NCBI RefSeq assembly: GCF_964213995.1 | Contig: NW_027590123.1 | Span: forward strand, 1,550,001 to 1,614,000 | DNA from: Mustelus asterias | Taxonomy: Eukaryota | Length of the DNA: 64,000 nucleotides | Direction: 5' to 3' | In this document: in pieces, positions 7,201 to 59,662 of the stretch | How positions within the stretch are numbered: the first letter of the stretch is position 1 | Layout: each line of letters opens with the position of its first letter | The notes under the pieces: generated by a model | Seen by the model: only the letters and a program-made list of their open reading frames with translations | What the model was told of the DNA's origin: nothing | Database searches by the model: none | Position numbers and translations under genes: made by a program

Positions 7201-7330
7201 ATTTTTAAAAAAAGATTTAAATGATTTTATGTGTGTACATTCTTGTTTATTTCAACCCTTCCTCAGTCCAAATCGTAACTTCTTTCCCGGAATCGTGTCT
7301 AATTCTATTCTTTATTTCCCTTCCTGACAG

Positions 7331-8232
7331 TGAACATAATCACAATTGTGACACTGACGAGCAGAAACTGTGGTCTGTCCAAATGTGTCACTCGTTACCT
7401 GGTGGCCATGTCAGCGGGGGATCTGCTGGTCGTTATCCTCGACCTGATATTGAGACACATTCCCAGTATTTATTGGATACAGTTTTATTTCCTGAGCTCT
7501 GTCCCCGTGTGTAACATCCACGCCGTCCTGCTTTATGCAGCCACTGACTGTTCTGTCTGGTTCACCGTCACTTTCACCTTTGATCGATTTGTGGCCATTT
7601 GCTGCCCCAAGCTGAAAAGTAAATATTGCAGTGAGAAATCAGCGGCTGTGGGTCTGGGAACAGTGACGGCGCTGAGCTGTTTAAAGAACATTTTCTGGTA
7701 TTTTATGTTATTAAATGAATATTCGCTGGCGAACGACCCCTGGTTTTGTGTTGCCACAATGGCTGTTACGGAATCTCCTGTCTGGGGAACAATCGAGTTC
7801 CTCCACTACATTCTAACCCCGACTGTCCCATTCATCCTGATTCTGCTTCTCAACGCTTTCACCGTCAGACACATTTTAGTGAGCAGCAGAGCCCGCAGGA
7901 GACTCCGGGCTCACAGCAGTGGGGAGAATCCCAGAGATCCAGAGATGGAGAGTCGCAGGAAATCGATCATTTTACTGTTTGTTATCTCAGCCAATTTCAT
8001 CCTCTTATGGTCGACATTAATGGTTTATTCTATATGGCGTCGGATGTATGGTTTGGGCTATCGGTCAGTAATGTTAGATTATTTCGTTATGGAATTTGGT
8101 TTCATGCTGCAACTCACAAGTTGCTGTACAAACACTGCCATTTATGCTGTGACACAGACTCAATTCAGACAGCAGTTGAAAAGTCTGCTGAAATGTCGTC
8201 TTCCTGCAATTCTTCAACTCATTAGACCGTGA
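7331..8232 (+). CDS. GPR139-like GPCR gene 1, coding exon 2 (TM1-TM7; spliced product ~371 aa)
   Basis: Acceptor TTCCTGACAG at 7330; NIITIVTL, YLVAMSAGDLLV, SVWFTVTFTFDRFVAICC, PFILILLLN, RRKSIILLF, CCTNTAIY; open to TGA. Confidence 0.9.
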
Positions 8233-8671: not shown

Positions 8672-11600
8672 AGCTAAAAACGGAGGGAGCTCTGGAGGAG
8701 TACAAAGAAAGTGGGAAAGAACTCAAATGGGGAATTAGAAGGGCAAAAAGGGATCACGAAATGTCCTTGGCAGACAGGATCAAGGAGAATCCCAAGGCAT
8801 TTTATTCATACGTTAGGAACAAAAGGGTTGTCAGGGAAAAAATCGGACCTCTCAGGGACAAAAGTGGGGAATTATGCTTGGAGCCCAAACAAGTAGGGGA
8901 GATACTAAATGAATACTTTGCGTCGGTATTCACAAAGGAGAGGGATGTGTTGACTGGGAGTGTCTCGGAGGGGAGTGTTGAACAGTTGGAGAAAATCTCC
9001 ATTACAAGGGAGAAAGTGTTAGATTTGTTAGAGAATATAAAGACTGACAAATCCCCAGGGCCTGATGGAATCAATCCAAGGCTGCTCAGGGAGATGAGAG
9101 ATTAAATCGCTTGGCCTCTGACGCAAATCTTTGTCTCGTCACTGGACGCAGGTGAGGTCCTAGAGGATTGGAGGATAGCTAATGTGGTCCCGTTATTTAA
9201 GAAGGATAGGAAGAATAACCCGGGTAATTATAGGCCGGTGAGCTTGATGTCCGTGGTGGGGAAGTTGTTGGAGAAGATTCTTAGAGATAGGATGTATGCG
9301 CATTTAGAAAGGAATAAACTCATTAACGATAGGCAGCATGGTTTTGTGAGAGGGAGGTCATGCCTCACTAACCTGGTGGAGTTTGTTGAAGGAGTGACCT
9401 GAATGGTTGACAATGGAAGAACATAAGAACATAAGAACATAAGAAACATAAGAAATAGGAGCAGGAGTAGGCCATCTAGCCCCTCGAGCCTGCCCCGCCA
9501 TTCAATAAGATCATGGCTGATCTGACGTGGATCAGTACCACTTACCCGCCTGATCCCCATAACCCTTAATTCCCTTACCGCTCAGGAATCCATCCATCCG
9601 CGCTTTAAACATATTCAGCGAGGTAGCCTCCACCACCTCAGTGGGCAGAGAATTCCAGAGATTCACCACCCTCTGGGAGAAGAAGTTCCTCCTCAACTCT
9701 GTCTTAAACCGACCCCCCTTTATTTTGAGGCTGTGTCCTCTAGTTTTAACTTCCTTACTAAGTGGAAAGAATCTCTCCGCCTCCACCCTATCCAGCCCCC
9801 GCATTATCTTATAAGTCTCCATAAGATCCCCCCTCATCCTTCTAAACTCCAACGAGTACAAACCCAATCTCCTCAGCCTCTCCTCATAATCCAAACCCCT
9901 CATCTCCGGTATCAACCTGGTGAACCTTCTCTGCACTCCCTCCAATGCCAATATATCCTTCCTCATATAAGGGGACCAATACTGCACACAGTATTCCAGC
10001 TGCGGCCTCACCAATGCCCTGTACAGGTGCATCAAGACATCCCTGCTTTTATATTCTATCCCCCTCGCAATATAGGCCAACATCCCATTTGCCTTCTTGA
10101 TCACCTGTTGTACCTGCAGACTGGGCTTTTGCGTCTCATGCACAAGGACCCCCAGGTCCCTTTGCACGGTAGCATGTTTTAATTTGTTTCCATTGAGATA
10201 GTAATCCCATTTGTTATTATTTCCTCCAAAGTGTATAACCTCGCATTTATCAACGTTATACTCCATTTGCCATATCCTCGCCCACTCACTCAGCCTGTCC
10301 AAATCTCTCTGCAGATCTTCTCCGTCCTCCACACGATTCACTTTTCCACTTATCTTTGTGTAGTCTGCAAACTTCGTTACCCTACACTCCGTCCCCTCCT
10401 CCAGATCATCTATATAAATGGTAAACAGTTGCGGCCCGAGTACCGATCCCTGCGGCACGCCACTAGTTACCTTCCTCCAACCGGAAAAACACCCATTTAT
10501 TCCGACTCTTTGCTTCCTGTCGGATAGCCAGTCCCCAATCCACTTTAACACACTACCCCCAACTCCGTGTGCCCTAATCTTCTTCAGCAGCCTTTTATGG
10601 GGCACCTTATCAAACGCCTTTTGGAAATCCAAAAACACCGCATCCACCGGTTCTCCTCCATCAACCGCCCTCGTCACATCTTCATAAAAATCCAACATGT
10701 TCGTCAAGCACGACTTTCCCCTCATGAATCCATGCTGCGTCTGATTGATCGAACCATTTCTATCCAGATGCCCTGCTATCTCCTCCTTAATAATGGATTC
10801 CAGCATTTTCCCTACTACAGACGTTAAGCTGACCGGCCTATAGTTACCCGCCTTTTGTCTCCTTCCTTTTTTAAACAGCGGCGTAACATTAGCCGTTTTC
10901 CAATCAACCGGAAGGGTCGTGGATGTCGTCTATATGGACTTTAGTAAAGCGTTTGACAAAGTCCCTCATGGTAGGCTGGTGAAAAATGTTGGATGTCATG
11001 GGATAAAGGGGAAGTTGGCTAGATGGGTGGAGAACTGGCTTGGTCACAGATGACAGAGGGTGGTAGTGGAAGGGTCTTTTTCCGGCTGGATGCCTGTGAC
11101 TAGTGGTGTTCCGCAGGGCTCTGTATTGGGACTTCTGCTGTTTGTGATTCATATAAACGATCTGGAAGAAGGTGTAACTGGGGTGATCAGTAAGTTTGCG
11201 GACGACACAAAATTGGCAGGACTTGCAGATAGTGAGTAGCATTGGCAGAAGCTAGAGAAGGATATAGATAGGCTGGAAATTTGGGCAAAGAAATGGCAGA
11301 TGGAGTTCAATCCTGATGAATGCGAAGTGAGGCATTTTTGTGGAAATAATGTAGGGAGGAGCTATACGATAAATGGCAGAATCATAAAGGGTGTAGATAC
11401 GCAGTGGGACCGGGGTGTGCAAGTCCACAGATCTTTGAAGGTGACGTCACAGGTGGAGAAGGTGGTGAAGAAGGCATATGGCATGCTTGCCTTTTTAGGA
11501 CGGGGCATAGAGTATAAAAGTTGGGGTCTGATGTTGCAGATGTATAGAACGTTGGTTCGGCCGCATTTGGAATACTGCGTCCAGTTCTGGTCGCCACACT

Positions 11601-12095
11601 ACCAGAAGGACGTGAAGGCTTTGGAGAGAGTACAGAGGAGGTTTACCAGGATGTTGCCTGGTATGGAGGGGCTTAGTTATGAGGAGAGATTGTGTAAACT
11701 GGGTTTGTTCTCCCTGGAAAGACGGAGGATGAGGGGAGACTTAATAGAGGTGTATAAAATTATGAAAGGCATAGATAGGGTGAACGGTGGGAAGCTTTTC
11801 CCCAGGTCGGTAGTGACGTTCACGAGGGGTCATAGGTTCAAGGTGAAGGGGGGGAGGTTTAACACAGATATCAGAAGGACGTATTTTACACAGAGGGTGG
11901 TGGGGGCCTGGAATGCGCTGCCAGGCAAGGCGGTGGAGGCGGACACACTGGGAACGTTTAAGACTTATCTAGATAGCCATATGAACAGAGTGGGAATGGA
12001 GGGATACAAAAGAGTGGTCTAGTTTGGACCAGGGAGCGACACGAGCTTGGAGGGCCGAAAGGCCTGTTCCTGTGCTGTATTGTTCTTTGTTCTTT
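8672..12095 (+). mobile_element. CR1 LINE (5'-truncated ORF2, disrupted), split by a nested CR1
   Basis: ORFs 8761..9105, 9184..9402, 11300..12022 (KENPKAFYSY, NYRPVSL, RPHLEYCVQFWSP); (TGTTCTT)n tail. Confidence 0.92.
9420..10909 (-). mobile_element. Young 5'-truncated CR1 nested in opposite orientation; open RT ORF 9532..10806
   Basis: 424-aa RT ORF, (TTCTTATG)n tail, TSD GGAAG at 9415-9419 and 10910-10914. Confidence 0.93.
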
Positions 12096-18273: not shown

Positions 18274-19642
18274 TTACAATTGTATTTTCATCAAGTCCAA
18301 TATTACTTTATCTCTCTCATCCTCCGCATACAATTCTGCCTCCACTTCTCGCCGGGTTTCCTCCAGCACCTTGCCGTCCAGTATGGGTTTGTATTCCTTG
18401 TCCTCTTCCTCCTCACTCATGGAGAACATCATCGGTTGAGTCGTTCGTGACCCTATCGATTCCAAGCTGGTCATCACCCATGTGATGAGACCCTTTACAA
18501 TGCCAATTCCAGTACTTATACACAGAGCCAAGAATATGGCATGTAACCCCACTTTCCTGAACCAACCAAGCCATCCTGACAGTTCCCATTCCCCTAATCC
18601 CTTGCCCTCTCTAATAGACCCTAGTTGCTGGTCAATTTTGTTCAGATAATTAGTGAGAATAGTAGTGACCGCATCTCGTCCCAGTATGCAGTGATCCTTC
18701 ATTATGGCACACAGGCCTCCTTGTCGAGCCAGCACGTAATCCAAGGCATATCTATTCTGCTGGGCATACAGACTGAGTTTCTCTAGTTGGGCGGTAATGA
18801 CCCGGAGGACCCCTTTTGTAGCGTTCCGCAAGGTGGTAAGGCCGCAAGCAATGTAATTACGATTATCTGCAGCCATTCGCCCTGGGACGGCTCCAAAGGA
18901 AAAGGAACCCGCCGCTCCATAGCCAGCAGCCTGACCAGGAGTGAGGGCAGTTATTTTCTTGTCGGCAGCGCAAAAACCCCCCGATAACTCCCGCTCTGGA
19001 CTTCTATGGTGATGACGTGAGGGCCCCCAATGGCTCGGACAAGAAACCATGCTGGGAAGTATGGCCCCTATTGCCACTGCCTGGGGGTAAGGGTAGGACA
19101 AATAATTGGTGGCCGTACCATTGAAAAAGAAGAAATACCCTGTTTCAGTGTACATGGTCTCTGAACACTTTTGCGATGTCCTGTCGGCTCGAACCCGGTA
19201 ATAGGTATTATCGGTTTCCAAAATTCTGGGATCCGGAACCTGTACATGCTGGTGCCGACCCTCTTCCTTCTGCATTAATCAGTACTATCGAAAAGTTCCT
19301 CCTGTAAGCATGAAGGTGGGTGCCATTCATATGGCCACAAATTAGATGTTCCCCTTTGTCCAATTCTCTACAGGTAGAATGCAAACACTTGCAGATTACC
19401 TCATTTCTCTGAGCTTCGTACCACATTTATGCTGATGGCAATGCTTACTCAGGCAGGGGTGATCCTGGCACACCTAAACTGTGGAGCATCCACAACCCCT
19501 CCCTTCTTACAACACAGAAAACCAAGCTGATGAGCCCCAAGAGTATTTTTGCCGATTGCATGCTGGTTTGTCCACACTTGATCACCAGCTGGAGGGGACA
19601 AAAACATAACGACAAGCACAACAACCACAGAGTAAAGAACAT
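18274..19642 (-). pseudogene. env: ERV env (gamma-type TM); 5' part has stops and a frameshift, 3' part open 18274..19275
   Basis: ISD QQNRYALDYVLARQGGLC-x6-C, TM helix GLHAIFLALCISTGIGIV, hydrophobic leader near 19642. Confidence 0.85.
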
Positions 19643-19733
19643 GTCACCCAGTACCGCCTCTCATACTAATCACCCGTAAGATCCTCGTCCCTGCCATCCT
19701 CAATTCCCCCCTTTTTGGGATCGGCTTGCCCGA

Positions 19734-20650
19734 TCAATTTACAGTGGTGGAGGTGGACCCAAGCATCGCGTCCCGCCACCTGAGCCGGTGTAGGGGTGGT
19801 TCACAAGACTTGGAGGGGCCCTCCCACCGTGGCTCCAAATGCTTGCGAGTCCAATTTTTGATGAGGACAAATGAGCCCGGTTTTACATTAGTGGGATTGG
19901 ATAAGGTAGGTGATTTACCGTAAGCAGGCCGGACTTGCGAGTGGACGTGGCGCAAGGAGTGAGTAAGAGAGAGGATATATGAGGTAATTTCATCCGTCAT
20001 ATGATGGAAATGAACGGGCGTCTTTGAGCCATCATTCCAACGGTTCCGCAGGGGTCGACCATACAAGACCTCCGCGGGCGAGAGATGGGGCCGTCCTGCA
20101 GGGTTAGTTCGTATTTGAAATAAAGCTACAGCGAGCAGTCTGTCCCAAGACAGACCTGAAGTTTCTACATGTTTAGCCAGCTTGGTTTTGAGCGTTTGAT
20201 TGGAGCGTTCAACTACACCAGAAGCCTGGGGATGGTGAGCACAATGGAGTCGTTGGCGAATATTCAGCTGGGCGCACAGCTCCTTATTGACCGATGCAAT
20301 AAAATGTGGGCCATTGTCAGAACTCAGGCAGGTCGGGACGACAAATCGAGGCACAATTTCGCGCAGTAAAATCCTGACGACAGTTGTTGCTTTCTTATCC
20401 GATGTACGATACGCTTCAATCCACTTACTCAAGACATCCACGATTACTAAGACATATTTATACCCCTGACATCTCTGCAACTTCATGAAGTCCATCTGCA
20501 GGGTCTCGAAGGGGCCTGCCGGCAGGGGAGTCTTACCCAGATCACAGGGCGCACTCTTGCCCGGATTATGCTGTTGGCATATCAAACAGCGGAGGCTTAG
20601 ACTTTGTGCAATGTCTTGTGGGCGAGGATGCCACCAGGAAGTGAGGAGTC
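19734..20650 (-). pseudogene. pol: ERV integrase (frameshifted)
   Basis: CxxC, GPFETLQMDF, YVLVIVD, SSDNGPHF, PQASGVVERSN, PRWEGP. Confidence 0.9.
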
Positions 20651-21643
20651 AATCCCTAAGAGACCTTGCACCACAGTGAGTTGCAAAGTGTACACAATCA
20701 ATTACCCAGAGAGCCAAAGTATCAGACATACAGGTTTGGTTAGCAGGGGTGATCCAGACTCCGGATTCTGGGTCCACCCTACAGCCCAATGCATTCCATA
20801 AATCTTTATCACGAGGCAAGGCTTCCTGGTGCAATCTGAGAACATAGATGGTTGGCATAGGTTTCTCAGAGGCAGGGCCATCCGCGTCCGGGCTTTTCCC
20901 CCGCCTCATCATTCGGGGCACAATCATCTGACAAGTTTTAGAAACCAATTTGGCCGCCTCATCTGCCCTATGATTACCTAAAGTGACAGGGTCTTTACCA
21001 GCGGTATGGGCGGCGCACTTAATCACTGCAATGCGTTCAGGCAGAAGAAGGGCCTGTAGTAAGTCAGACACCAGTTGTTTGTGTGAAATAGGGGCGCCGG
21101 ATGATGTAAGGAATCCTCTATTCCTCCATAGTTGTCCAAAGTCATGGACAACTCCAAAGGCATATTGGGAGATCGTGTAAATGTTAACATTCAAACTCCG
21201 ACCCAGAACACAAGCTCTGATGAGGGCAAACAGTTCGGCTTGCTGAGCTGAGAAAGGGGTCTCAAAAGCTGCTGACTCCAAAATAACCCCCTGGTCATTC
21301 ACAATAGTGTACCCTGAGAGCCGATGGCCTCTCTCATCAATGGAGGCACTGCCATCGGTGAACATAATGAGGTCGGGGTTCGTCAGGGGAATATCAGAGA
21401 GATCGGGGTGCACAGTGGTATCTTCCCTAAGAAGGACGGAGCAGTCATGTGGAGGGGAATCAGCAACCTGGGGTGGGGGGGGGTGGGGCGCGTGGGTCAG
21501 GAAATTAGCTGGATTAATAACAGTGCAATGCTTAAAGGTAAGCTGAGGATTATTAAGCAAATAAATCTCATATCGGTTCTGTCTAGCCGCAGTCAGATGT
21601 TGAGTCTGTAACTGGCCTAACAGTGCTGCCACTATGTGAATGG
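20649..21643 (-). pseudogene. pol: ERV pol connection and RNase H domain
   Basis: INPANFL, MFTDGSA, SAQQAELFAL, YAFGVVHDFG, GNHRADEAAK. Confidence 0.9.
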
Positions 21644-22405
21644 TCAGTTTGTTGGGCGTTGGGCGTTGGGGCTGGGACAGTTGGGACTGAGACTGGTGAC
21701 CTTAATTACAATTGGGGTCTGCGAACCTAACATGCCAGGGAGAGGGGGGTACAGGGTCAAGTGTTGTCCCTGGTACAGGGGAGGCGCAGTTTTACCCTCA
21801 GGAGAAGGGGCAGTTGGACCAGGGATCTCTTCCCGTGTATCGGCGTCCGCAATAGATGCCGCCGGGGGTGGTTCAGCTAAGGGCTGCTCTTGAGGCGGGT
21901 GAGGCAGAAGAGGTGTAGTTGCCCGCGTCATCCAATGGTGTAAATCCTCACCTGTATCATTATCAGTGACCTTAATGCCATCCATCATGTTCTCTATCTC
22001 AGAAGCCTCACAATCCTTGAGAGAACGTTTCTTACGTAAGCATTCCCTTTTCAACACCTCAACCGGTTTCAGAGCCCCTCCCTCCATTAATTCTATTCCC
22101 AACTTAACAGCACTGTCCTGCCAACTGGTTAGGAGACTCTGCTCCTTTAACTCCAGACAACGTTGCAACCATAACCCTATAAGTTCCTTCGTCTTCCTCC
22201 CCGTATTCTTTCGCCAAATTTGTTGCTGCGCAGCTTTAACAAGTTGGATATTTTTGGTCCCTCCTGGGGGCCATTCGGATGTCCCTAATTTATGGGTCAA
22301 TGCCCCCGACAATTGTCTCAATTTGGTGGCTTTATCCGGATATTTCTCGCAAAGCATTTGTAAGGTTGAATTTGTCTGATTGGTTGTATCCAAGTAGTTC
22401 CCCAT
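21644..22405 (-). pseudogene. gag: ERV gag N-terminal part (MA and late-domain region); CA/NC/PR/RT deleted
   Basis: MG start at 22405, WPPGGT matrix motif, PTAP/PPLY/LYPPL motifs, joined directly to pol connection domain. Confidence 0.75.
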
Positions 22406-22816
22406 TTTAAAACAAACTGTTGTATTCACTCAATACCCCGGTAAATTCAATTCGTGCTCTAACAATTCTATCACCACCTCACCAGTTCCCTGGTGACCCT
22501 CGCCGATCAACGGCGACCCTCAGTGAATTACGGTTCTGCTCATTTATTCACTGACTACTTATTTTATACCTCACCGTTTTCACATTGACCCAATAACAAC
22601 CGACCTGGAGTTGCACAAGCTGATGAAATCACAGGCTATTCCGTCGGGGCGGCTGGCGACAACAAACGAAAGGTCAACAAACACCAGAATGACAGGGCAG
22701 AGGAAAACCAAGTGATTGTATCAACGGTACTCACGCACTTGGGTGGCCAATTCCTCAGTCCCGGACTCGGTGCTGCTCAGTCTAACGCCGTTTTCTGTCG
22801 TCTGCCGACCGTTGGA

Positions 22817-50699: not shown

Positions 50700-52818
50700 T
50701 TGTGGGGCTACCGTCAGGGAAAGGCACGAATGAAAAGTGGAACTTTTTCAAGGAACAAATACTGGGTGTCCTTGATATGTATGTCCCTGTCACGCAGGGA
50801 GGAAATGGCCGAGTGAGGGAACCATGGTTCACGAAAGAGGTGGAATTTTTTGTGAAAAGGAAGAGGGACGCCTATGTAGGGATGAGGAAACAAGGTTCAG
50901 ATGGCTCGATTGAGGGTTACAAGTTAGCAAGGAACGAGCTGAAAAAGGGGCTTAGGAGAGCTTGGAGGGGACATGAGAAGTCCTTGGCGGGTCGGTTCAA
51001 GGAAAACCCCAAGGCTTTTTACTCTTATGTGAGGAATAAAAGAATGACCAGGGTGAGGTTAGGGCCGGTCAAGGACAGTAGTGGGAACTTGTGTATGGAG
51101 TCAGTAGAGATAGGCGAGGTGATGAATGAATACTTTTCTTCAGTGTTCACCAAGGAGAGAGGCCATGTTTTTGAGGAAGAGAAGGTGTTACAGGCTTATA
51201 GGCTGGAGGAAATAGATGTTCGGAGGGAGGATGTCCTGGCAGTTTTGAATAAACTGAAGGTCGATATGTCCCCTGGGCCTGATAAAATATATCCTCGGAT
51301 ACTTTGGGAGGCAAGGAATGAGATTGCAGAGCCTTTGGCTTTGATCTTTGGGTCCATACTGTCCACGGGGATGGTGCCAGAGGACTGGAGAGTGGTGAAT
51401 GTTGGTCCTCTGTTTAAGAAAGGGAATAGAAATGACCCCGGTAATTATAGACCGGTTAGTCTTACTTCGGTGGTTGGTTAATTGATGGAAAAGGTCCTTA
51501 GGGATGAGATTTACGACCATTTAGAACGATGTGGATTAATCCGGGATAGTCAGCACGGATTCGTGAAGGGCATGTCATGCCTCACAAACTTGATTGAATT
51601 TTTTGAGGAGATAACTAAGTGTGTTGATGAAGGTAGGGCAGTTGATGCCACATACATGGATTATAGTAAGGCGTTTGATAAGGTCCCCCATGGTCGGCTT
51701 ATGATGAACGTGAGGAGGTGTGGGATAGAGGGAAAGTTGGCCGATTGGATAGGTAACTGGCTGTCTGATCGAAGACAGAGGGTGGTGGTGGATGGAAAAT
51801 TATCGGATTGGAGGCAGGTTGCGAGCGTAGTGCCACAGGGATCAGTGCTTGGTCGTCTGTTCTTTGTAATTTTTAATAATGACTTAGAGGAGGGGGCTGA
51901 AGGGTGGATCAGTAAATTTACTGATGACACCAAGATTGGTGGAGTAGTGGATGAGGTGGAGGGCTGTTGTAGGCTGCAAAGAGACATAGATAGGATGCAA
52001 AGCTGGGTTGCAAAATGGCAAATGAAGTTTCACCCTGATAAATGTGAGGTGATTCATTTTGGTAGGACTAATTTAAATGTGGATTACAGGATCAAAGGTA
52101 GGGTTCTGAAGACTGTGGAGGAACAGAGAGATCTTGGGGTCCATATCCACAGATCTCTAAAGGTTGCCACTCAAGTGGATAGAGCTGTGAAGAAGGCCTA
52201 TAGTGTGTTCGCTTTTATTAACAGGGGGTTGGAGTTTAAGAGCCGTGGGGTTATGCTGCAACTATACAGGACCTTGGTGAGACCACATTTGGAATACTGT
52301 GTGCAGTTCTGGTCACCTCACTATAAGAAGGATGTGGAAGCGCTGGAAAGAGTGCAGAGGAGATTTACCAGGATGCTGCCTGGTTTGGAGGGTAGGTCTT
52401 ATGAGGAAAGGTTGAGGGAGCTAGGGCTGTTCTCTTTGGAGTGGAGGAGGCTGAGGGGAGATTTAATAGAGGTTTATAAAATGATGAAGGGGATAGATAG
52501 AGTGAACGTTCAAAGACTATTTCCTCGGGTGGATGGAGCTATTACAAGGGGGCATAACTATAGGGTTCGTGGTGGGAGATATAGGAAGGATATCAGAGGT
52601 AGGTTCTTTACGCAGAGGGTGGTTGGGGAGTGGAATGGACTGCCTGCAGTGATAGTGGAGTCAGACACTTTAGGAACATTTAAACGGTTATTGGATACGC
52701 ACATGGAGCACACTAGGATGATAGGGAGTGGGATAGCTTGATCTTGGTTTCAGATAAAGCTCGGCACAACATCGTGGGCCGAAGGGCCTGTTCTGTGCTG
52801 TACTGTTCTATGTTCTAT
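50700..52818 (+). mobile_element. CR1 LINE ORF2 (ORFs 50702..51481 and 51482..52741, one in-frame stop)
   Basis: Complete RT motif set, (TGTTCTA)n tail. Confidence 0.93.
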
Positions 52819-53356: not shown

Positions 53357-54559
53357 AGACGTTGTAATCATGTAATTTACTGATATAGTTAGTGAAATAA
53401 TTTAGAAGGAATGGAGATGGGAAGGGCCAGCAGAAATCTCCAACCTAATTTTTCATTGAATCTGGTCATCATGAAATGTGCAACAAACAGAAATCATCTC
53501 CAGTCAGAAAAAACAATGAGCTGCATTTAAGGGTCGGCACCATTTAAACTGTCCTCAAACTCGTCTGGTTCCCAATCTCCTGCCAGAAATTACAACAAAT
53601 CTTTCTGCTGAATTTGCTCAGGGTCTTTATTTCGGAAAGGACAGGGCACAACGCGAGACTGAGATTTCTATGCATTTCCAGGAAATAACTTATTTGGTTT
53701 CACGGTTTGGACGAGAGCAGCAAATCTTCATTTTCTGATCTGCAATCAAAAGAGCAGTATCCAATTTCTAACCACCAAGTTACAGCGTGTTTTACAATTT
53801 GCTTCATCCGCGCTCCTTTTGTTATTGTAATTTTCACTCCGGACGACTTTCACGACAAACAAGATTCTCCTACAAAATGGCACGTTGTGATTCACTACCA
53901 ATGATGTGTCCGGCCAATGACAACATGCCGCAAATACTCCACGACTGTTATCACTTTCGTTTCCGACGGTTCAAACCGGACTGAAATATTTCGAAATGTT
54001 TTTCATTGAAGAGTGAGGGCTAAATTTCATAATTCAGTGCCAGTGTACATGGCAAAATCTGACCCATTGCCATCCAGATTTTTCCTTATATCACCAGCTC
54101 TATTGGCAGCGTTTTGCAGCCCATTACTGTCCTTCTCTTTCAGTGTTTTTCCATGAACATTTGCACTTGTGATATTTCCAATGAAGTAAACTTGAAAATA
54201 TCACTCGACTGAATTTAATAGATCCGCTTCCGATCAGAGAGTAAATCGGATTAGTTCTAACAGTCTTGCCAGAGCAGTAATTATTTTCCTGAGAGAGAAT
54301 TGAACCGAAACCTCACGAGCAGAGTGTGGAACACAAAACACTGGACTCCAGGGCAACTAGTGAACTATAGTTTCTCAAACCGATTGACCTCATATTCCTT
54401 TGCTCATTATTTTCATCTCAGATTTGTTTTACCATCGACAAGTTGCTCCTTCAACATGTCCTGTTTGGATGGTACATAAGTGCCTCCTTCAGCCAACGAC
54501 AACACGGATTGAGTTCGCTGCATCATGAAATTGACAGTGAGGTGAAATAGTCCCACAAG

Positions 54560-55195
54560 ATGCTGAAGTTTAGAAGGATGAGAGGAGATCTGATCGAGGC
54601 AATCTCGGCCTTTTGGCTAAGATCAAGTGTAGCATGGAGAGGATGCTGCACTTGGTTGAGGTCATTAGGTTACGCTGAAGCTTCATATGTTTCATATGAA
54701 GCAATTTTTAAAAGCGGCATTTCGGCCTTTTGGCTAAGATGCAAATGAGCCCAAGTCTTGGAGGAGGAACCTCCCCCTTCTCCAATCAGCTTGGCTCATG
54801 TAGATCGGGCCCAGGACAGGGTGGTTTGGTCGCTTGCCCTGTCTTGTCAACCTGGATCTGAAATGTCTCAACTTGTTGAGACTCTGAATTGGATTTGATT
54901 TGATTGAATTGGAAAAGTATTTTAAAAAAATAAATAAATAAAAATAAAATTCTAAAAGGGATTGATTGATTAAACGTAAACCATCCCGAACAAGAGGTCA
55001 CAGGTATAGATTGAGAGGCGGTGGATTTAAAAGTGAGATGAGAAGGAAGTACTTCCCGCAGAGTGTGGTGAATTGGTGGAACTCGCTGCCCCATAGCACG
55101 GCGGAGTCTCAATCGCTGGATGATTTCAATAAGGAGATAGATATATTTCCAACTTAAAAAACTAGTTAAAGGGATATGGAAAACAAGCGGGGATT
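54560..55195 (+). mobile_element. CR1 3' fragment hosting the U2-headed insertion
   Basis: FRRMRGDLIE | ILKGID...RGHRYRLRGG.FKSEMRR.YF.QSVVN.WNSLP. Confidence 0.8.
54598..54949 (+). mobile_element. U2 snRNA-headed, A-tailed retroposon (SINEU-like or non-autonomous U2-targeting element)
   Basis: U2 nt 7-36 at 54603-54632, second U2 5' motif at 54722-54740, non-U2 structured body, A-rich tail, interrupts CR1. Confidence 0.7.
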
Positions 55196-55375
55196 TAAAG
55201 AGCAGCGAAAGATGAAATTAAAAAAAAAACATTGCTGATGCAGGCATCTCTCGCCAGAGACTCAGAAAAGTGCAATGTAGTAGAAGTTGAACTGGCTGAC
55301 AAATTCCACCTTTGTAAGGAATTTAAACAAAAGTTCCTTCGACAAATCAATCCTCAACAATGGCAAATAAGAGCA

Positions 55376-55440
55376 AGGATCCACCTAAATTTAGACGCAG
55401 TTTGCTGGGTTCAGAGTGCTCACCATTAGACCAGAGAACC
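55376..55440 (-). pseudogene. tRNA-Gln pseudogene
   Basis: GGTTCTCTGGTCTAATGGTGAGCACTCTG, with a deletion. Confidence 0.65.
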
Positions 55441-55563
55441 TATAACATCGCAGCCGGTTGCAAATGGTCACTCAAAGCATTTGACCCACTTACTGTTGCT
55501 GCCACATTGAATGAAAAAGGTCACATGCTTTGAGTGACCATTTGCATCGGGCGGCTCTGTTCC

Positions 55564-55635
55564 TGTTTCTCTGCTGTGATGGTGAGCACCCTGGACTCCG
55601 AATGCAGTAATCGGAGTTTAGAGCTTGGTAAAAGA
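55564..55635 (+). pseudogene. tRNA-Gln pseudogene
   Basis: GATGGTGAGCACCCTGGACTCCGAATGCAGTAATCGGAGTT. Confidence 0.6.
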
Positions 55636-56040: not shown

Positions 56041-56300
56041 CTTGCTCAATAATTGCCAGACTCCAGTCGAATTGTTATTGTGTGACACCAACCACTTCTT
56101 TTTTTCAAAAAAGGAGTTGAAGGACAGCGAAAAGATGAAAAACACTAACGTTGCAGGGATCTGGCGCCTGAGGCTCAGCAATGTGCATTGTAATAGCAGT
56201 TGAACTGGCTGACAAATTGTCCTCTCTCTTCGTGCTTTGTGAGAAATTGAAACGAAGCGCCCTTCAGCAAATCAATCATCTGCCTTTGCAAATTAAAGCA

Positions 56301-56372
56301 AGGCTCTGCCGAGATTTGAACTCGGATTGCTGGATTCAAAGTCCAGAGTGCTCACCATTACACCACGAAACC
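56301..56372 (-). tRNA. tRNA-Gln(TTG), near-intact
   Basis: GGTTTCGTGGTGTAATGGTGAGCACTCTGGACTTTGAATCCAGCAATCCGAGTTCAAATCTCGGCAGAGCCT; one acceptor-stem mismatch. Confidence 0.8.
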
Positions 56373-56786
56373 CAACTCACGACAGCCATCTGAAAATCGT
56401 CGCTCCATACTTATGCCAATTTGAACAGCAGGGCGAAATATCAGTCCCGTTGCACAATCCCGTCAATTACCCACAGCAATTCATATTTACATTGCTGGTT
56501 CCTCCTGTAAAAATGAGTTGGTTACCTTCAACTGCATTAAATTTCACTGCAGCTGATCACATTCAAAGAGCAATGTTAGCATCGAACAGATATCAACCTT
56601 ATTGTGGAAACGTTACTGAACAACATCAGCTGATCAGAGCTCTGCTTTCATCACACTGGAAGCCAATGTGAAAATATGAAGAATTTCAAATCTTAACAGA
56701 CAGAAAGGAGTGTGTGACTGTGGACAATTGGCGCTGTGCATATTCCGGTAATCAGTCTCTAGGAAAATCAGGCAGATGGGATCCTG

Positions 56787-58660: not shown

Positions 58661-59387
58661 TGCAAACTGGAGGAACATCCCCCGATGTCACGATTCGGAT
58701 CTTACTGCATTCCAGACTTAACACTGAGTTCAACAATGTCAGAGCATCTCCTTTCCTCCATCTTCACCCCATTTCCATTTATTTTGTTTTATTTAATTTG
58801 ATTCTAATTATTTTTATTAATTAATATTTTTTCTTTTATATCGATGTTTATTTTTTGAGTTCCATGTTTTGCACTGTTTATTTAAATCTCACTTTCCATC
58901 TTGTTGTCCCCTCTCCCTCCATCCCGCTCGGGCCAAATCCTACATTTCCTTTGTTCTGCCATTTGCACATTCTGATCTCGAAATGCGCAGCCTGCAGCAC
59001 CCTTCTCAGCCATGGTCACCACCATTTAATTTGCCTTTTTGTTTTTCTTGATTGATATGTGACACCTTTGCCACCAACCCCTCACCCATATCCCTCACCA
59101 TTACAGTATAAATCTCGTCCACGTTTCTTTGTCTTCAGCTCTGACGAAGGTCATCCTGACTTTGAACGTTAGCTCTATTCTCTCTTCACAGAGGCTTTCA
59201 GACCTGTTGAGATTTTCTGGCATTTTTTGACCTTGTTTCAGATTCCAGCATCCGCAGGAAATTTGTTTATATCAAGAGGCTCTTGTCAGACGGATTTGTC
59301 CCTGGAATACAAAAAAGCCCCGCTGAAATTGAAAAAAATGCGCCAAGTTACCATAGATAGGCGAGATTAAAACCATTGCAGGCAGCT

Positions 59388-59458
59388 TCCCTGGTGGTCA
59401 ATGGTTAGGATTTGTTGTTTTCACCACTGCGGCCCGAGTTCGATTCCCGGTCAGAGAA
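59388..59458 (+). pseudogene. tRNA-Glu(TTC), probably pseudogene
   Basis: TCCCTGGTGGTCAATGGTTAGGATT...TTTCACC...GAGTTCGATTCCCGGTCAGAGAA; anticodon-stem mismatches. Confidence 0.75.
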
Positions 59459-59662
59459 TGGCAATTTATTGTTTTCTTACAGAACATGATGTAAGTGGAG
59501 TTGGAATTACTTCTTGATCGAAAGCATGAGTGATATTCCTGCCAGTTTCAAAAGCAGAGAGAAAAATCCGCCCCATTCCACAAACTCGTCAATTACCTGC
59601 AGCAATTTATATTTGCATCGCTTCTTTTGGTTCCTCCAGTCAAAATGAATAATGACACATTC

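What the first reader, a model, noticed from the sequence alone, without database searches (positions are those of the whole stretch)
54598..54949. Dimeric U2-snRNA-headed, highly structured retroposon that hides the U2 branch-point-recognition sequence
Seen: a ~350-bp insert splits a CR1 reading frame (GDLIE | ILKGID). It starts with 30 nt identical to U2 snRNA nt 7-36 (54603-54632), repeats the U2 stem-loop I motif at 54722-54740 (both copies preceded by GGCA) and ends in an A-rich tail. The rest is not U2 and forms many stems. CAAGTGTAGCAT/ATGCTGCACTTG (54624-54654) pairs over the GUGUAG branch-recognition segment. GCTTCATATG/CATATGAAGC (54680-54702) is a perfect hairpin, followed by an Sm-like AATTTTTA. 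Further stems: ATGAGCCCAAG/CTTGGCTCAT, TTGGAGG/TCTCCAA, CAGGACAGGG/CCCTGTCTTG, TCTCAAC/GTTGAGA. Known: snRNA-headed SINEs (SINEU) are described from crocodilians, and Keno (Tx1) and Utopia (NeSL) retrotransposons insert in U2 close to this position. Inference: this is either a shark U2-derived SINE family or a non-autonomous passenger of a U2-targeting LINE. Masking the branch-recognition sequence could limit interference with splicing. No clear TSD.
Basis: partly seen in the sequence, partly recalled or inferred. Interest (0 to 1): 0.82.

Follow-up and report, generated by a model that had tools for sequence, protein, structure and literature searches.

The report
Shark U2-headed SINE-like retroposon copy
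A roughly 345-base mobile-element copy in a shark genome begins with a piece of the U2 spliceosomal RNA and resembles the snRNA-headed SINEs that, in the papers I could search, are described only from crocodilians.

Summary
A ~345-bp insert (54598 to ~54943) splits a decayed CR1 3' end between GDLIE and (Y)KILKGID. It opens with 30 nt identical to U2 snRNA positions 7-36. A second U2 stem-loop-I module follows 117 nt later. The non-U2 body folds far better than shuffles (z -5.66). The insert ends in an A-rich tail carrying four AATAAA, with no target-site duplication and 3-5 nt of CR1 lost.

The host is a shark: 120 of 120 listed best hits of a neighbouring receptor ORF are shark proteins.

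My best reading is a copy of a SINEU-type, Pol II-dependent non-autonomous retroposon moved by a Keno-like Tx1 LINE. The strongest new point is that the U2 head stops at U2 position 38/39. That is the published Keno/Utopia insertion point in U2 genes, so the head looks like carried-along upstream target.

Family status was not shown directly. Sampled words of the element occur in 20 runs from 11 studies.

This scan noted U2-headed elements before on other DNA of the same genome (36 unchecked notes). The idea that the stem masks the branch-point sequence to protect splicing is untested. "Dimeric" applies to the heads only.

The parts
54483..54600 (+). Left part of the host, a 5'-truncated, decayed CR1 3' end that finishes with ...RRMRGDLIE
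   Evidence: One search finds similarity to other CR1 copies from about 54483. One search gives the translation with one stop. One search gives the empty-site comparison.
54598..54636 (+). U2-derived head, module 1. It is identical to U2 positions 7-36, mismatches at position 37 and matches at 38-39. The first few nt are not canonical U2.
   Evidence: Rfam U2 alignment; read by eye. The end at position 38/39 equals the Keno/Utopia junction in PMC4640811, section 6.
54624..54654 (+). Hairpin A: a 12-bp stem (11 Watson-Crick pairs and 1 G.U) with a 7-nt loop. Its 5' arm is U2 positions 28-39.
   Evidence: The head's single departure from the U2 consensus, at position 37, makes a G-C pair where U2's own letter would give G.U.
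54680..54702 (+). Hairpin B: a perfect 10-bp stem with a 3-nt loop
   Evidence: I2, 100% complementary.: -12.6 kcal/mol, z -5.0, 0 of 200 shuffles as good.
54704..54712 (+). Sm-site-like A-T5-A motif. It is also a T5 run that would stop RNA polymerase III.
   Evidence: One search places the T run at 54705-54709. One search shows the Rfam U2 model placing its Sm region here.
54717..54751 (+). U2-derived module 2. GGCA is followed by U2 positions 7-26 (19 of 20 matching the consensus) and then by a decayed continuation that I aligned by eye to about U2 position 36.
   Evidence: D1, 95%; U2 positions 7-26, 13.6 bits, E 1.6. The extension to position 36 is my own reading by eye.
54745..54799 (+). 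Hairpin C: an outer stem enclosing a 10-bp inner hairpin. Its 5' arm overlaps the decayed end of module 2.
   Evidence: -30.1 kcal/mol, z -5.66, 0 of 200 shuffles as good. Also.
54812..54846 (+). Hairpin D
   Evidence: I5, 90% complementary; z -2.1, 6 of 200 shuffles as good.
54865..54882 (+). Hairpin E: 7 bp, the last stem before the tail and a candidate recognition stem for the reverse transcriptase
   Evidence: z -2.8, 1 of 200 shuffles as good. Also. The proposed function is inferred.
54885..54919 (+). Short direct repeats (TGAATTGGA, two copies) ahead of the tail
   Evidence: D5
54920..54943 (+). A-rich tail with AATAAA repeats. The end of the insert is ambiguous by about 3 nt because it merges with the A-rich CR1 target.
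   Evidence: (73% A over 54920-54949; AATAAA at 54929, 54933, 54937 and 54943)
54944..55200 (+). Right part of the host CR1 3' end, (Y)KILKGID..., decayed with stops and deletions

Best explanation
This is one retroposed copy of a non-autonomous, non-coding retroposon of the SINEU type in a shark. I propose four steps.

1. TRANSCRIPTION (inferred). [quoted passage not shown] The most economical source is a master sitting at the Keno insertion point of a U2 gene. Its transcript would start in U2 and carry U2 nt 1-38 as a 5' cap of target sequence. Read-through from other flanking promoters is the alternative.

2. BINDING (inferred). The RNA, with its 3' hairpin and A-rich tail, is taken in trans by the reverse transcriptase/endonuclease of a Keno-like Tx1 LINE.

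3. NICKING (junctions shown, enzyme inferred). The endonuclease nicks the bottom strand in the A/T-rich CR1 motif GTGTATA|AAAT. That motif resembles the U2 target around positions 31-39. Reverse transcription is primed on the tail.

4. COMPLETION (shown). The copy is full length. The top strand was cut 3-5 nt upstream, so there is a small target deletion and no duplication.

The second, more decayed U2 module records an earlier head. A newer head plus about 80 nt was later added in front of it, as in the recurrent 5' additions of crocodilian SINEU-1. Since both modules arrived in one insertion, their differences arose in the source lineage. The source was therefore an evolving element rather than a fresh chimera.
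For: - Retroposed insert in a CR1 frame, with an A-rich tail and a 3-5 nt target deletion.
- U2 head identical over positions 7-36 and ending at 38/39. PMC4640811, section 6, states that U2 downstream of Utopia starts at nt 39, that the upstream fragment expected is nt 1-38, and that Keno has the same 3' flank.
- Two U2 modules that are 21 of 22 identical. Both are preceded by GGCA and share a non-canonical start. Module 2 is further from U2.
- No polymerase III A or B box within one mismatch. There are three T runs of 4-5 in 54637-54949 and a fourth in the head loop. Four AATAAA lie in the tail.
- No Rfam family explains the body.
- The body is strongly structured.
- Sampled 31-letter words of the element occur in 20 of 22 listed runs, from 11 studies and at least nine coded organisms, at shares of 0.06-0.62.
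- The host is a shark.
- Published parallels in crocodilian SINEU (PMC4494074, Results and Discussion read): U2 heads, recurrent 5' additions, polyA tails, oligo-T inside, both TSD and truncation, target preference shared with the Keno-related Tx1-Mar LINEs, and Tx1 families that carry U2 heads.
Against: - Only one copy was seen. The 64-kb window has no other.
- No other copy was found in any collection.
Copy number, shared ends, target preference and the LINE partner are therefore all untested.
- The word shares could also come from orthologous single-copy loci in related, slowly evolving sharks.
- The head does not begin at U2 nt 1, which a transcript started by a U2 promoter would predict.
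- snRNA promoters normally couple to 3'-box processing and not to polyadenylation (recalled). A U2-promoter master with an AATAAA tail is therefore not a clean fit.
- The likeness of the CR1 site to the U2 target is only GTGTA plus TA and was noticed after the fact.
Confidence: 0.62

Rival explanations
1. It is an internally deleted, non-autonomous derivative of a Keno-like Tx1 LINE, made of the LINE's U2-capped 5' UTR joined to its 3' UTR. It would not be a SINE of independent origin. It would move in the same way as in the best explanation, but its body would be LINE sequence.
For: - The head ends at the Keno junction (PMC4640811, section 6).
- About 80 nt of structured non-U2 sequence follows the head.
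- Kojima reports Tx1 families with U2 heads almost identical to SINEU heads, and discusses non-autonomous LINEs such as Bov-A (PMC4494074, Results and Discussion).
- An unchecked note of this scan (s1-892088) speaks of a full-length Keno-like LINE with a U2 cap in this genome. This is a lead only.
Against: - No LINE with matching ends is in the window.
- The internal second U2 module is not expected in a simple 5'+3' deletion derivative.
- Kojima found no LINE matching the SINEU-1 3' half.
Confidence: 0.3
2. It is a one-off chimeric retrocopy. A LINE reverse transcriptase copying some polyadenylated RNA switched template to U2 snRNA, twice, and inserted the product once.
For: - snRNA chimeras made by template switching are known (cited in the PMC4494074 Discussion).
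- Only a single copy is in the window.
- An unchecked note (s1-894106) reads a similar element as template switching.
Against: - The two U2 modules share the same non-U2 prefix and a non-canonical start. They also differ in their distance from U2, although they arrived in one event.
- Both modules stop near the same U2 position (module 2 by eye).
- Words of the body are held by 20 runs in 11 studies.
Confidence: 0.1
3. It is, or encodes, a functional U2-like small RNA that mimics an snRNA: stem-loop I, an Sm-like site between hairpins, and a masked branch-point-recognition segment. It would use snRNP biogenesis for stability or nuclear import.
For: - U2 stem-loop I is intact twice.
- An A-U5-A motif lies between two hairpins, where the Rfam U2 model places its Sm site.
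- The fold is strong.
- The one change in the head strengthens the masking stem (by eye).
Against: - The Rfam score is below the U2 gathering score (34.4 against 46).
- The body gives no U2 signal beyond positions 7-26.
- The Sm-like motif lacks the usual G (consensus recalled).
- It lies inside a dead CR1 with no snRNA promoter context.
- No run on record as RNA holds it, which is weak evidence.
Confidence: 0.07
4. It is a classical SINE transcribed by RNA polymerase III, with the U2-like part acting as an internal promoter.
For: Its size and layout are SINE-like, with a small-RNA head, a body and an A-rich tail.
Against: - No A or B box within one mismatch.
- T4-T5 runs start inside the head loop.
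- U2 genes use external polymerase II promoters (PMC4494074, Discussion).
Confidence: 0.03

Closest known systems
SINEU (SINEU-1, -2, -3) of crocodilians (Kojima 2015, PMC4494074)
   Same: - A short non-coding retroposon with a 5' head taken from U2 snRNA.
- More than one snRNA-derived piece stacked at the 5' end.
- A polyA or A-rich tail, and oligo-T inside, so not polymerase III.
- Both target-site duplication and truncation occur.
- A link to Keno-related Tx1 LINEs.
   Different: - The host is a shark rather than a crocodilian.
- The target here is a CR1 3' end and not Mariner-N4_AMi.
- The body is a chain of strong hairpins, a property the parts of the paper I read do not report for SINEU.
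- Sequence relatedness to the crocodilian consensus sequences could not be tested, because Repbase and Dfam were not available.
Keno (Tx1 clade) and Utopia (NeSL clade) LINEs that target U2 genes (PMC4640811; PMC4494074)
   Same: The U2 head ends at position 38/39, the shared insertion point of both lineages. The head therefore equals the upstream target flank.
   Different: - This element encodes no protein.
- It lies in a CR1 and not in a U2 gene.
- The downstream flank is CR1 and not U2 nt 39 onward.
snRNA/LINE chimeric retrocopies made by template switching (for example U6/L1), as cited in the PMC4494074 Discussion
   Same: An snRNA piece is fused 5' to unrelated retroposed sequence carrying an A tail.
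   Different: Those are independent single events with canonical snRNA sequence. Here the two modules share derived features and differ in age.
Genuine U2 snRNA (Rfam RF00004)
   Same: Positions 7-36 are identical, stem-loop I is intact, and an Sm-like motif lies between hairpins.
   Different: - The score is 34.4 bits against a gathering score of 46.
- There is no U2 stem IIa/IIb, III or IV sequence.
- It has an A tail and sits inside a CR1.

Membership tests
SINEU (snRNA-headed SINEs) | 5' head derived from U1 or U2 snRNA | tested here: met
   identical to the U2 consensus at positions 7-36; second module covering positions 7-26.
SINEU (snRNA-headed SINEs) | Short (under 500 bp), non-coding, with a 3' polyA or A-rich tail | tested here: met
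   About 345 bp. Only short ORFs of 46 aa or less lie wholly inside it. The tail is 73% A.
SINEU (snRNA-headed SINEs) | No polymerase III promoter, with oligo-T inside | tested here: met
   no A or B box within one mismatch (consensus motifs recalled). T runs at 54705-54709, 54728-54731 and 54920-54923.
SINEU (snRNA-headed SINEs) | Many copies with the same composite structure, that is, a transposing unit rather than a sum of chimeras | tested here: inconclusive
   No second copy in the window. Words are held by 20 of 22 listed runs from 11 studies. No other copy could be fetched. The scan's 36 notes are unchecked leads.
SINEU (snRNA-headed SINEs) | Target preference shared with a Tx1 partner LINE | not testable with these tools
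   One filled and five empty CR1 sites of this kind lie in the window. No partner LINE was available.
SINEU (snRNA-headed SINEs) | Sequence similarity of the body to the SINEU-1, -2 or -3 consensus | not testable with these tools
   Repbase and Dfam are not on hand, and the papers' supplements are closed.
Keno/Utopia-type U2-gene insertion | Upstream junction at U2 nt 38 | tested here: met
   the U2 likeness stops at model position 38/39. PMC4640811, section 6.
Keno/Utopia-type U2-gene insertion | Downstream flank is U2 from nt 39, that is, the element sits in a U2 gene | tested here: not met
   The downstream flank is CR1.
Keno/Utopia-type U2-gene insertion | Encodes a reverse transcriptase and endonuclease, or shares its termini with a LINE that does | not testable with these tools
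   The element has no such ORF, and no LINE was available for comparison.
U2 snRNA gene (RF00004) | Reaches the Rfam gathering score with the 3' domain present | tested here: not met
   34.4 against 46 bits. Without the head, only positions 7-26 match, at 13.6 bits.
tRNA-, 7SL- or 5S-headed polymerase III SINE | Head matching one of those RNAs, with internal A and B boxes | tested here: not met
   no such Rfam match in the element; no boxes.

The most novel reading that the evidence does not exclude
The element may be more than a passenger and may act as an snRNA mimic. Its U2 stem-loop I, its Sm-like U-run set between hairpins, and its 5' end could let the retroposon RNA enter the snRNP pathway (Sm-ring loading, cap hypermethylation, snurportin import) and so get back into the nucleus. 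The 12-bp stem would keep the branch-point-recognition letters from titrating introns. The same layout, with the U2 28-38 segment as the 5' arm of a stem, recurs in the second module.
Probability: 0.07. Interest if true: 0.85.

Novelty: new member of a known kind. Interest (0 to 1): 0.5.

Why it matters
If the family is confirmed, it would extend snRNA-headed SINEs from crocodilians to cartilaginous fish. That points either to an ancient origin or to repeated birth of such elements wherever Keno-type LINEs live.

The head boundary at U2 position 38/39 also offers a concrete, testable origin for such heads. They would be upstream target sequence carried by transcripts of masters lodged in U2 genes, rather than random template switches. 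This bears on the question Kojima left open of how SINEU is transcribed.

A reused CR1 site that resembles the U2 target would be a natural case of relaxed target specificity.

Tried and rejected
OTHER COPIES IN THE WINDOW. blastn of the element against all 64 kb gave only the self hit, the internal 22-nt repeat and weak A/T-rich hits (at most 31.9 bits).

I therefore have no depth profile, no empty-site joints and no RNA evidence.

OTHER COPIES THROUGH PROTEINS.
- The 108-aa antisense ORF spanning the element's 3' part and the CR1 flank found no candidate in the search for homologous proteins.
- The same ORF found no relative among metagenome contigs. 592 stretches matched a pattern, and none was confirmed.
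- The 46-aa sense ORF of the body, searched against 1.84 billion representatives, gave 2 hits at E ~3e-7. Both are translated tandem repeats unrelated to the element.

OTHER COPIES THROUGH DNA. One 24-mer of the body had 0 exact matches in the metagenome, bacterial/archaeal genome and viral contigs. These collections are unlikely to hold shark DNA, so the blanks say little. The findings search by sequence was blank.

ORIGIN OF THE BODY. Rfam run on 54637-54949 with permissive filters gave nothing credible. The best match was SNORD94 at 20.9 against 60 bits. An HDV-ribozyme-like match at 12.4 bits, E 7.7, is noise.

REJECTED READINGS.
- A genuine U2 gene: below threshold, with no 3' domain.
- A polymerase III SINE: no boxes, and T runs inside.

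LITERATURE. Searches found no paper describing a U2-headed SINE in sharks or anywhere outside crocodilians. Repbase Reports, Dfam and subscription journals are not covered, so 'not in print' holds only for this library. Supplements of PMC4494074 (figs S1-S6) and PMC4640811 (S1 Fig) were not opened. They may hold the exact U2 coordinates of the SINEU heads and the Keno junctions.

Full report
WHAT IS THERE. Reading 54000-55600 shows a stretch of about 345 bp that interrupts a CR1 3' end. The left flank translates to ...MLKFRRMRGDLIE and the right flank to ...KILKGID followed by a decayed CR1 C-terminus with stops. Five uninterrupted CR1 copies in the same window, at 11735+, 28577+, 52457+, 16983- and 9831-, read RGDLIEVYK(I/M)MKGIDRV or close variants through this point. 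Their DNA is close to GGAGAT..ATAGAGGTGTATAAAATTATGAA. In the interrupted copy GAGG is followed by the insert, and CR1 resumes at about ATAAAATT. The insert therefore runs from 54598/54600 to about 54943. Three to five CR1 bases are missing and there is no target-site duplication. The host fragment is short and old, with similarity to other CR1s starting near 54483.

THE U2 PARTS. Rfam's U2 model aligns to 54597-54790 at 34.4 bits (E 3e-4 in a 6-kb search), below its gathering score of 46. The score comes almost wholly from the 5' end. The window equals the consensus at model positions 7-36 (30 nt), differs at 37, agrees at 38-39, and then diverges.

A second module at 54719-54740 is 21 of 22 identical to 54602-54623. 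Alone it aligns to U2 positions 7-26 (13.6 bits, E 1.6). Both modules are preceded by GGCA and share a non-canonical start. By eye, the second module continues in decayed form to about U2 position 36. Nothing else is shared between the two 'units', so the element is two-headed and not dimeric.

THE BODY. With the head left out, 54637-54949 folds to -110 kcal/mol against -80.6 +/- 5.2 for 100 shuffles (z -5.66, none as good). The single hairpins give these values:
- 54680-54702: z -5.0, 0 of 200 shuffles as good.
- 54745-54799: z -5.7, 0 of 200.
- 54812-54846: z -2.1, 6 of 200.
- 54865-54882: z -2.8, 1 of 200.

I checked the stem that covers the branch-point-recognition letters (54624-54635 with 54643-54654) by eye only. 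It has twelve pairs, one of them G.U. The head's single departure from U2, at position 37, gives a G-C pair where U2's own base would wobble. In the second module the corresponding decayed segment is again the 5' arm of a stem (hairpin C).

No Rfam family explains the body. There is no polymerase III A or B box within one mismatch. T4-T5 runs lie at 54705-54709, 54728-54731 and 54920-54923, and another sits in the head loop. The tail is 73% A with four AATAAA.

HOST AND SURROUNDINGS. A 300-aa 7TM ORF at 7330-8229 (Pfam 7tm_1) has 1948 relatives at E <= 1e-20. All 120 listed are named shark proteins, with the top identity, 87%, to Mustelus asterias. The window is therefore from a shark, probably a carcharhiniform, and not from a crocodilian. 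The window also holds CR1 reverse-transcriptase ORFs and retrovirus-like ORFs. It holds a tRNA-Gln gene 1.4 kb downstream of the element.

IS IT A FAMILY? This is the weak point.
- The window has no second copy.
- The look-up of sequencing runs listed 22 runs. Twenty hold part of the stretch, three hold at least half of its 34 sampled words (best 0.62), and they come from 11 studies and at least nine coded organisms. None is on record as RNA.
- That result fits a repeat shared by several sharks. Orthologous single-copy loci in slowly evolving relatives could give similar shares.
- Several holders are small runs (60-150 million letters). If those numbers are read totals of DNA libraries, that would require a high copy number. 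I could not confirm what the numbers count or what kind of libraries they are.

There is also internal evidence. The two modules arrived in one insertion yet differ in their distance from U2, and they share derived letters. The source RNA therefore already had a history as an element.

This scan has 36 notes in the same genome that speak of U2-headed SINE-like elements. They include elements of 331-360 letters, reuse of one CR1 site, a TSD-flanked two-headed copy, and a full-length Keno-like LINE with a U2 cap. These notes are unchecked. I used them as leads only.

COMPARISON WITH WHAT IS KNOWN. For Kojima 2015 (PMC4494074) I read the abstract, Results, Discussion and passages. The paper reports the following for SINEU:
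- Heads taken from U1 or U2, with recurrent 5' additions of U1 or U2 pieces.
- PolyA tails.
- Oligo-T inside and no recognisable promoter.
- Both TSD and truncation.
- A preference for one Mariner family, shared with Tx1-Mar LINEs that cluster with Keno.
- Tx1 families that carry U2 heads.
- The statement that no SINEU was detected outside crocodilians.

For Kojima and Jurka 2015 (PMC4640811) I read section 6 and passages. Utopia and Keno share the same 3' flank in U2. The downstream U2 starts at nt 39 and the expected upstream fragment is nt 1-38. Weakly specific families land at U2-like motifs such as TGTAGTATCTG.

The head here ends at 38/39. The CR1 site GGTGTATA|AAAT shares GTGTA and, with one gap, TA with the U2 site. 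With that alignment the nick falls where the A-rich tail meets CR1. I noticed this likeness after the fact and it is short, so I count it as a hint.

MECHANISM. See Best explanation. The shown steps are the retroposed nature of the insert, the junctions, the small deletion, the U2 boundary, the lack of polymerase III features and the strong fold. The inferred steps are polymerase II transcription of a master (possibly in a U2 gene), the Keno-like Tx1 partner, target choice through a U2-like motif, and any role of the hairpins. For the hairpins I think recognition by the partner's proteins and RNA stability are more likely than protection of splicing.

NOVELTY. Searches found no paper on snRNA-headed SINEs in sharks or outside crocodilians. 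One review passage (PMC5381603) and two passages of later Kojima papers mention SINEU only by citing the 2015 paper, and the review names crocodilians as its hosts. Repbase and Dfam could not be checked. I file it as a probable new member of a known kind.

LIMITS. After I kept the named places out of all tools. For that reason no full-length fold and no further search of the head were made.

Noticed in passing
window 55455-55550: A near-perfect long hairpin of 96 nt: MFE -47.8 kcal/mol, z -8.4, 0 of 200 shuffles as good. Its only matches are weak, sub-threshold microRNA-family hits (mir-3145, 34.8 against 98 bits). It looks like a foldback or MITE-like repeat just downstream of the host CR1.
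   Followed up: partly
window 56300-56373 (-): A tRNA-Gln(UUG) gene (59.2 bits) lies 1.4 kb downstream of the element. An unchecked note of this scan (s1-891042) describes a U2-headed element beside a tRNA-Gln gene 485 kb away, so the two loci may be paralogous.
   Followed up: no
window 59387-59459 (+): ARAGORN calls a 73-nt tRNA with anticodon TCA as tRNA-SeC. It is too short for a genuine selenocysteine tRNA (recalled), so it may be a mutated tRNA gene or a tRNA-derived repeat.
   Followed up: no
window 7330-8229 (+): An intact 300-aa GPR139-like 7TM receptor ORF. It belongs to a very large shark-specific expansion, with 1948 relatives at E <= 1e-20 and all 120 listed coming from sharks.
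   Followed up: partly
window 18277-22429 (-): Retrovirus-like ORFs in a row: an envelope-like ORF (TLV_coat), an integrase core and an RNase H. This is an endogenous retrovirus, which I only observed and did not analyse further.
   Followed up: no
window 11735, 28577, 52457 (+); 16983, 9831 (-): Five CR1 copies with the uninterrupted RGDLIEVYK site, usable as empty-site references. The ORFs at 9535-10806 (-) and 51482-52738 (+) still carry long reverse-transcriptase frames.
   Followed up: yes
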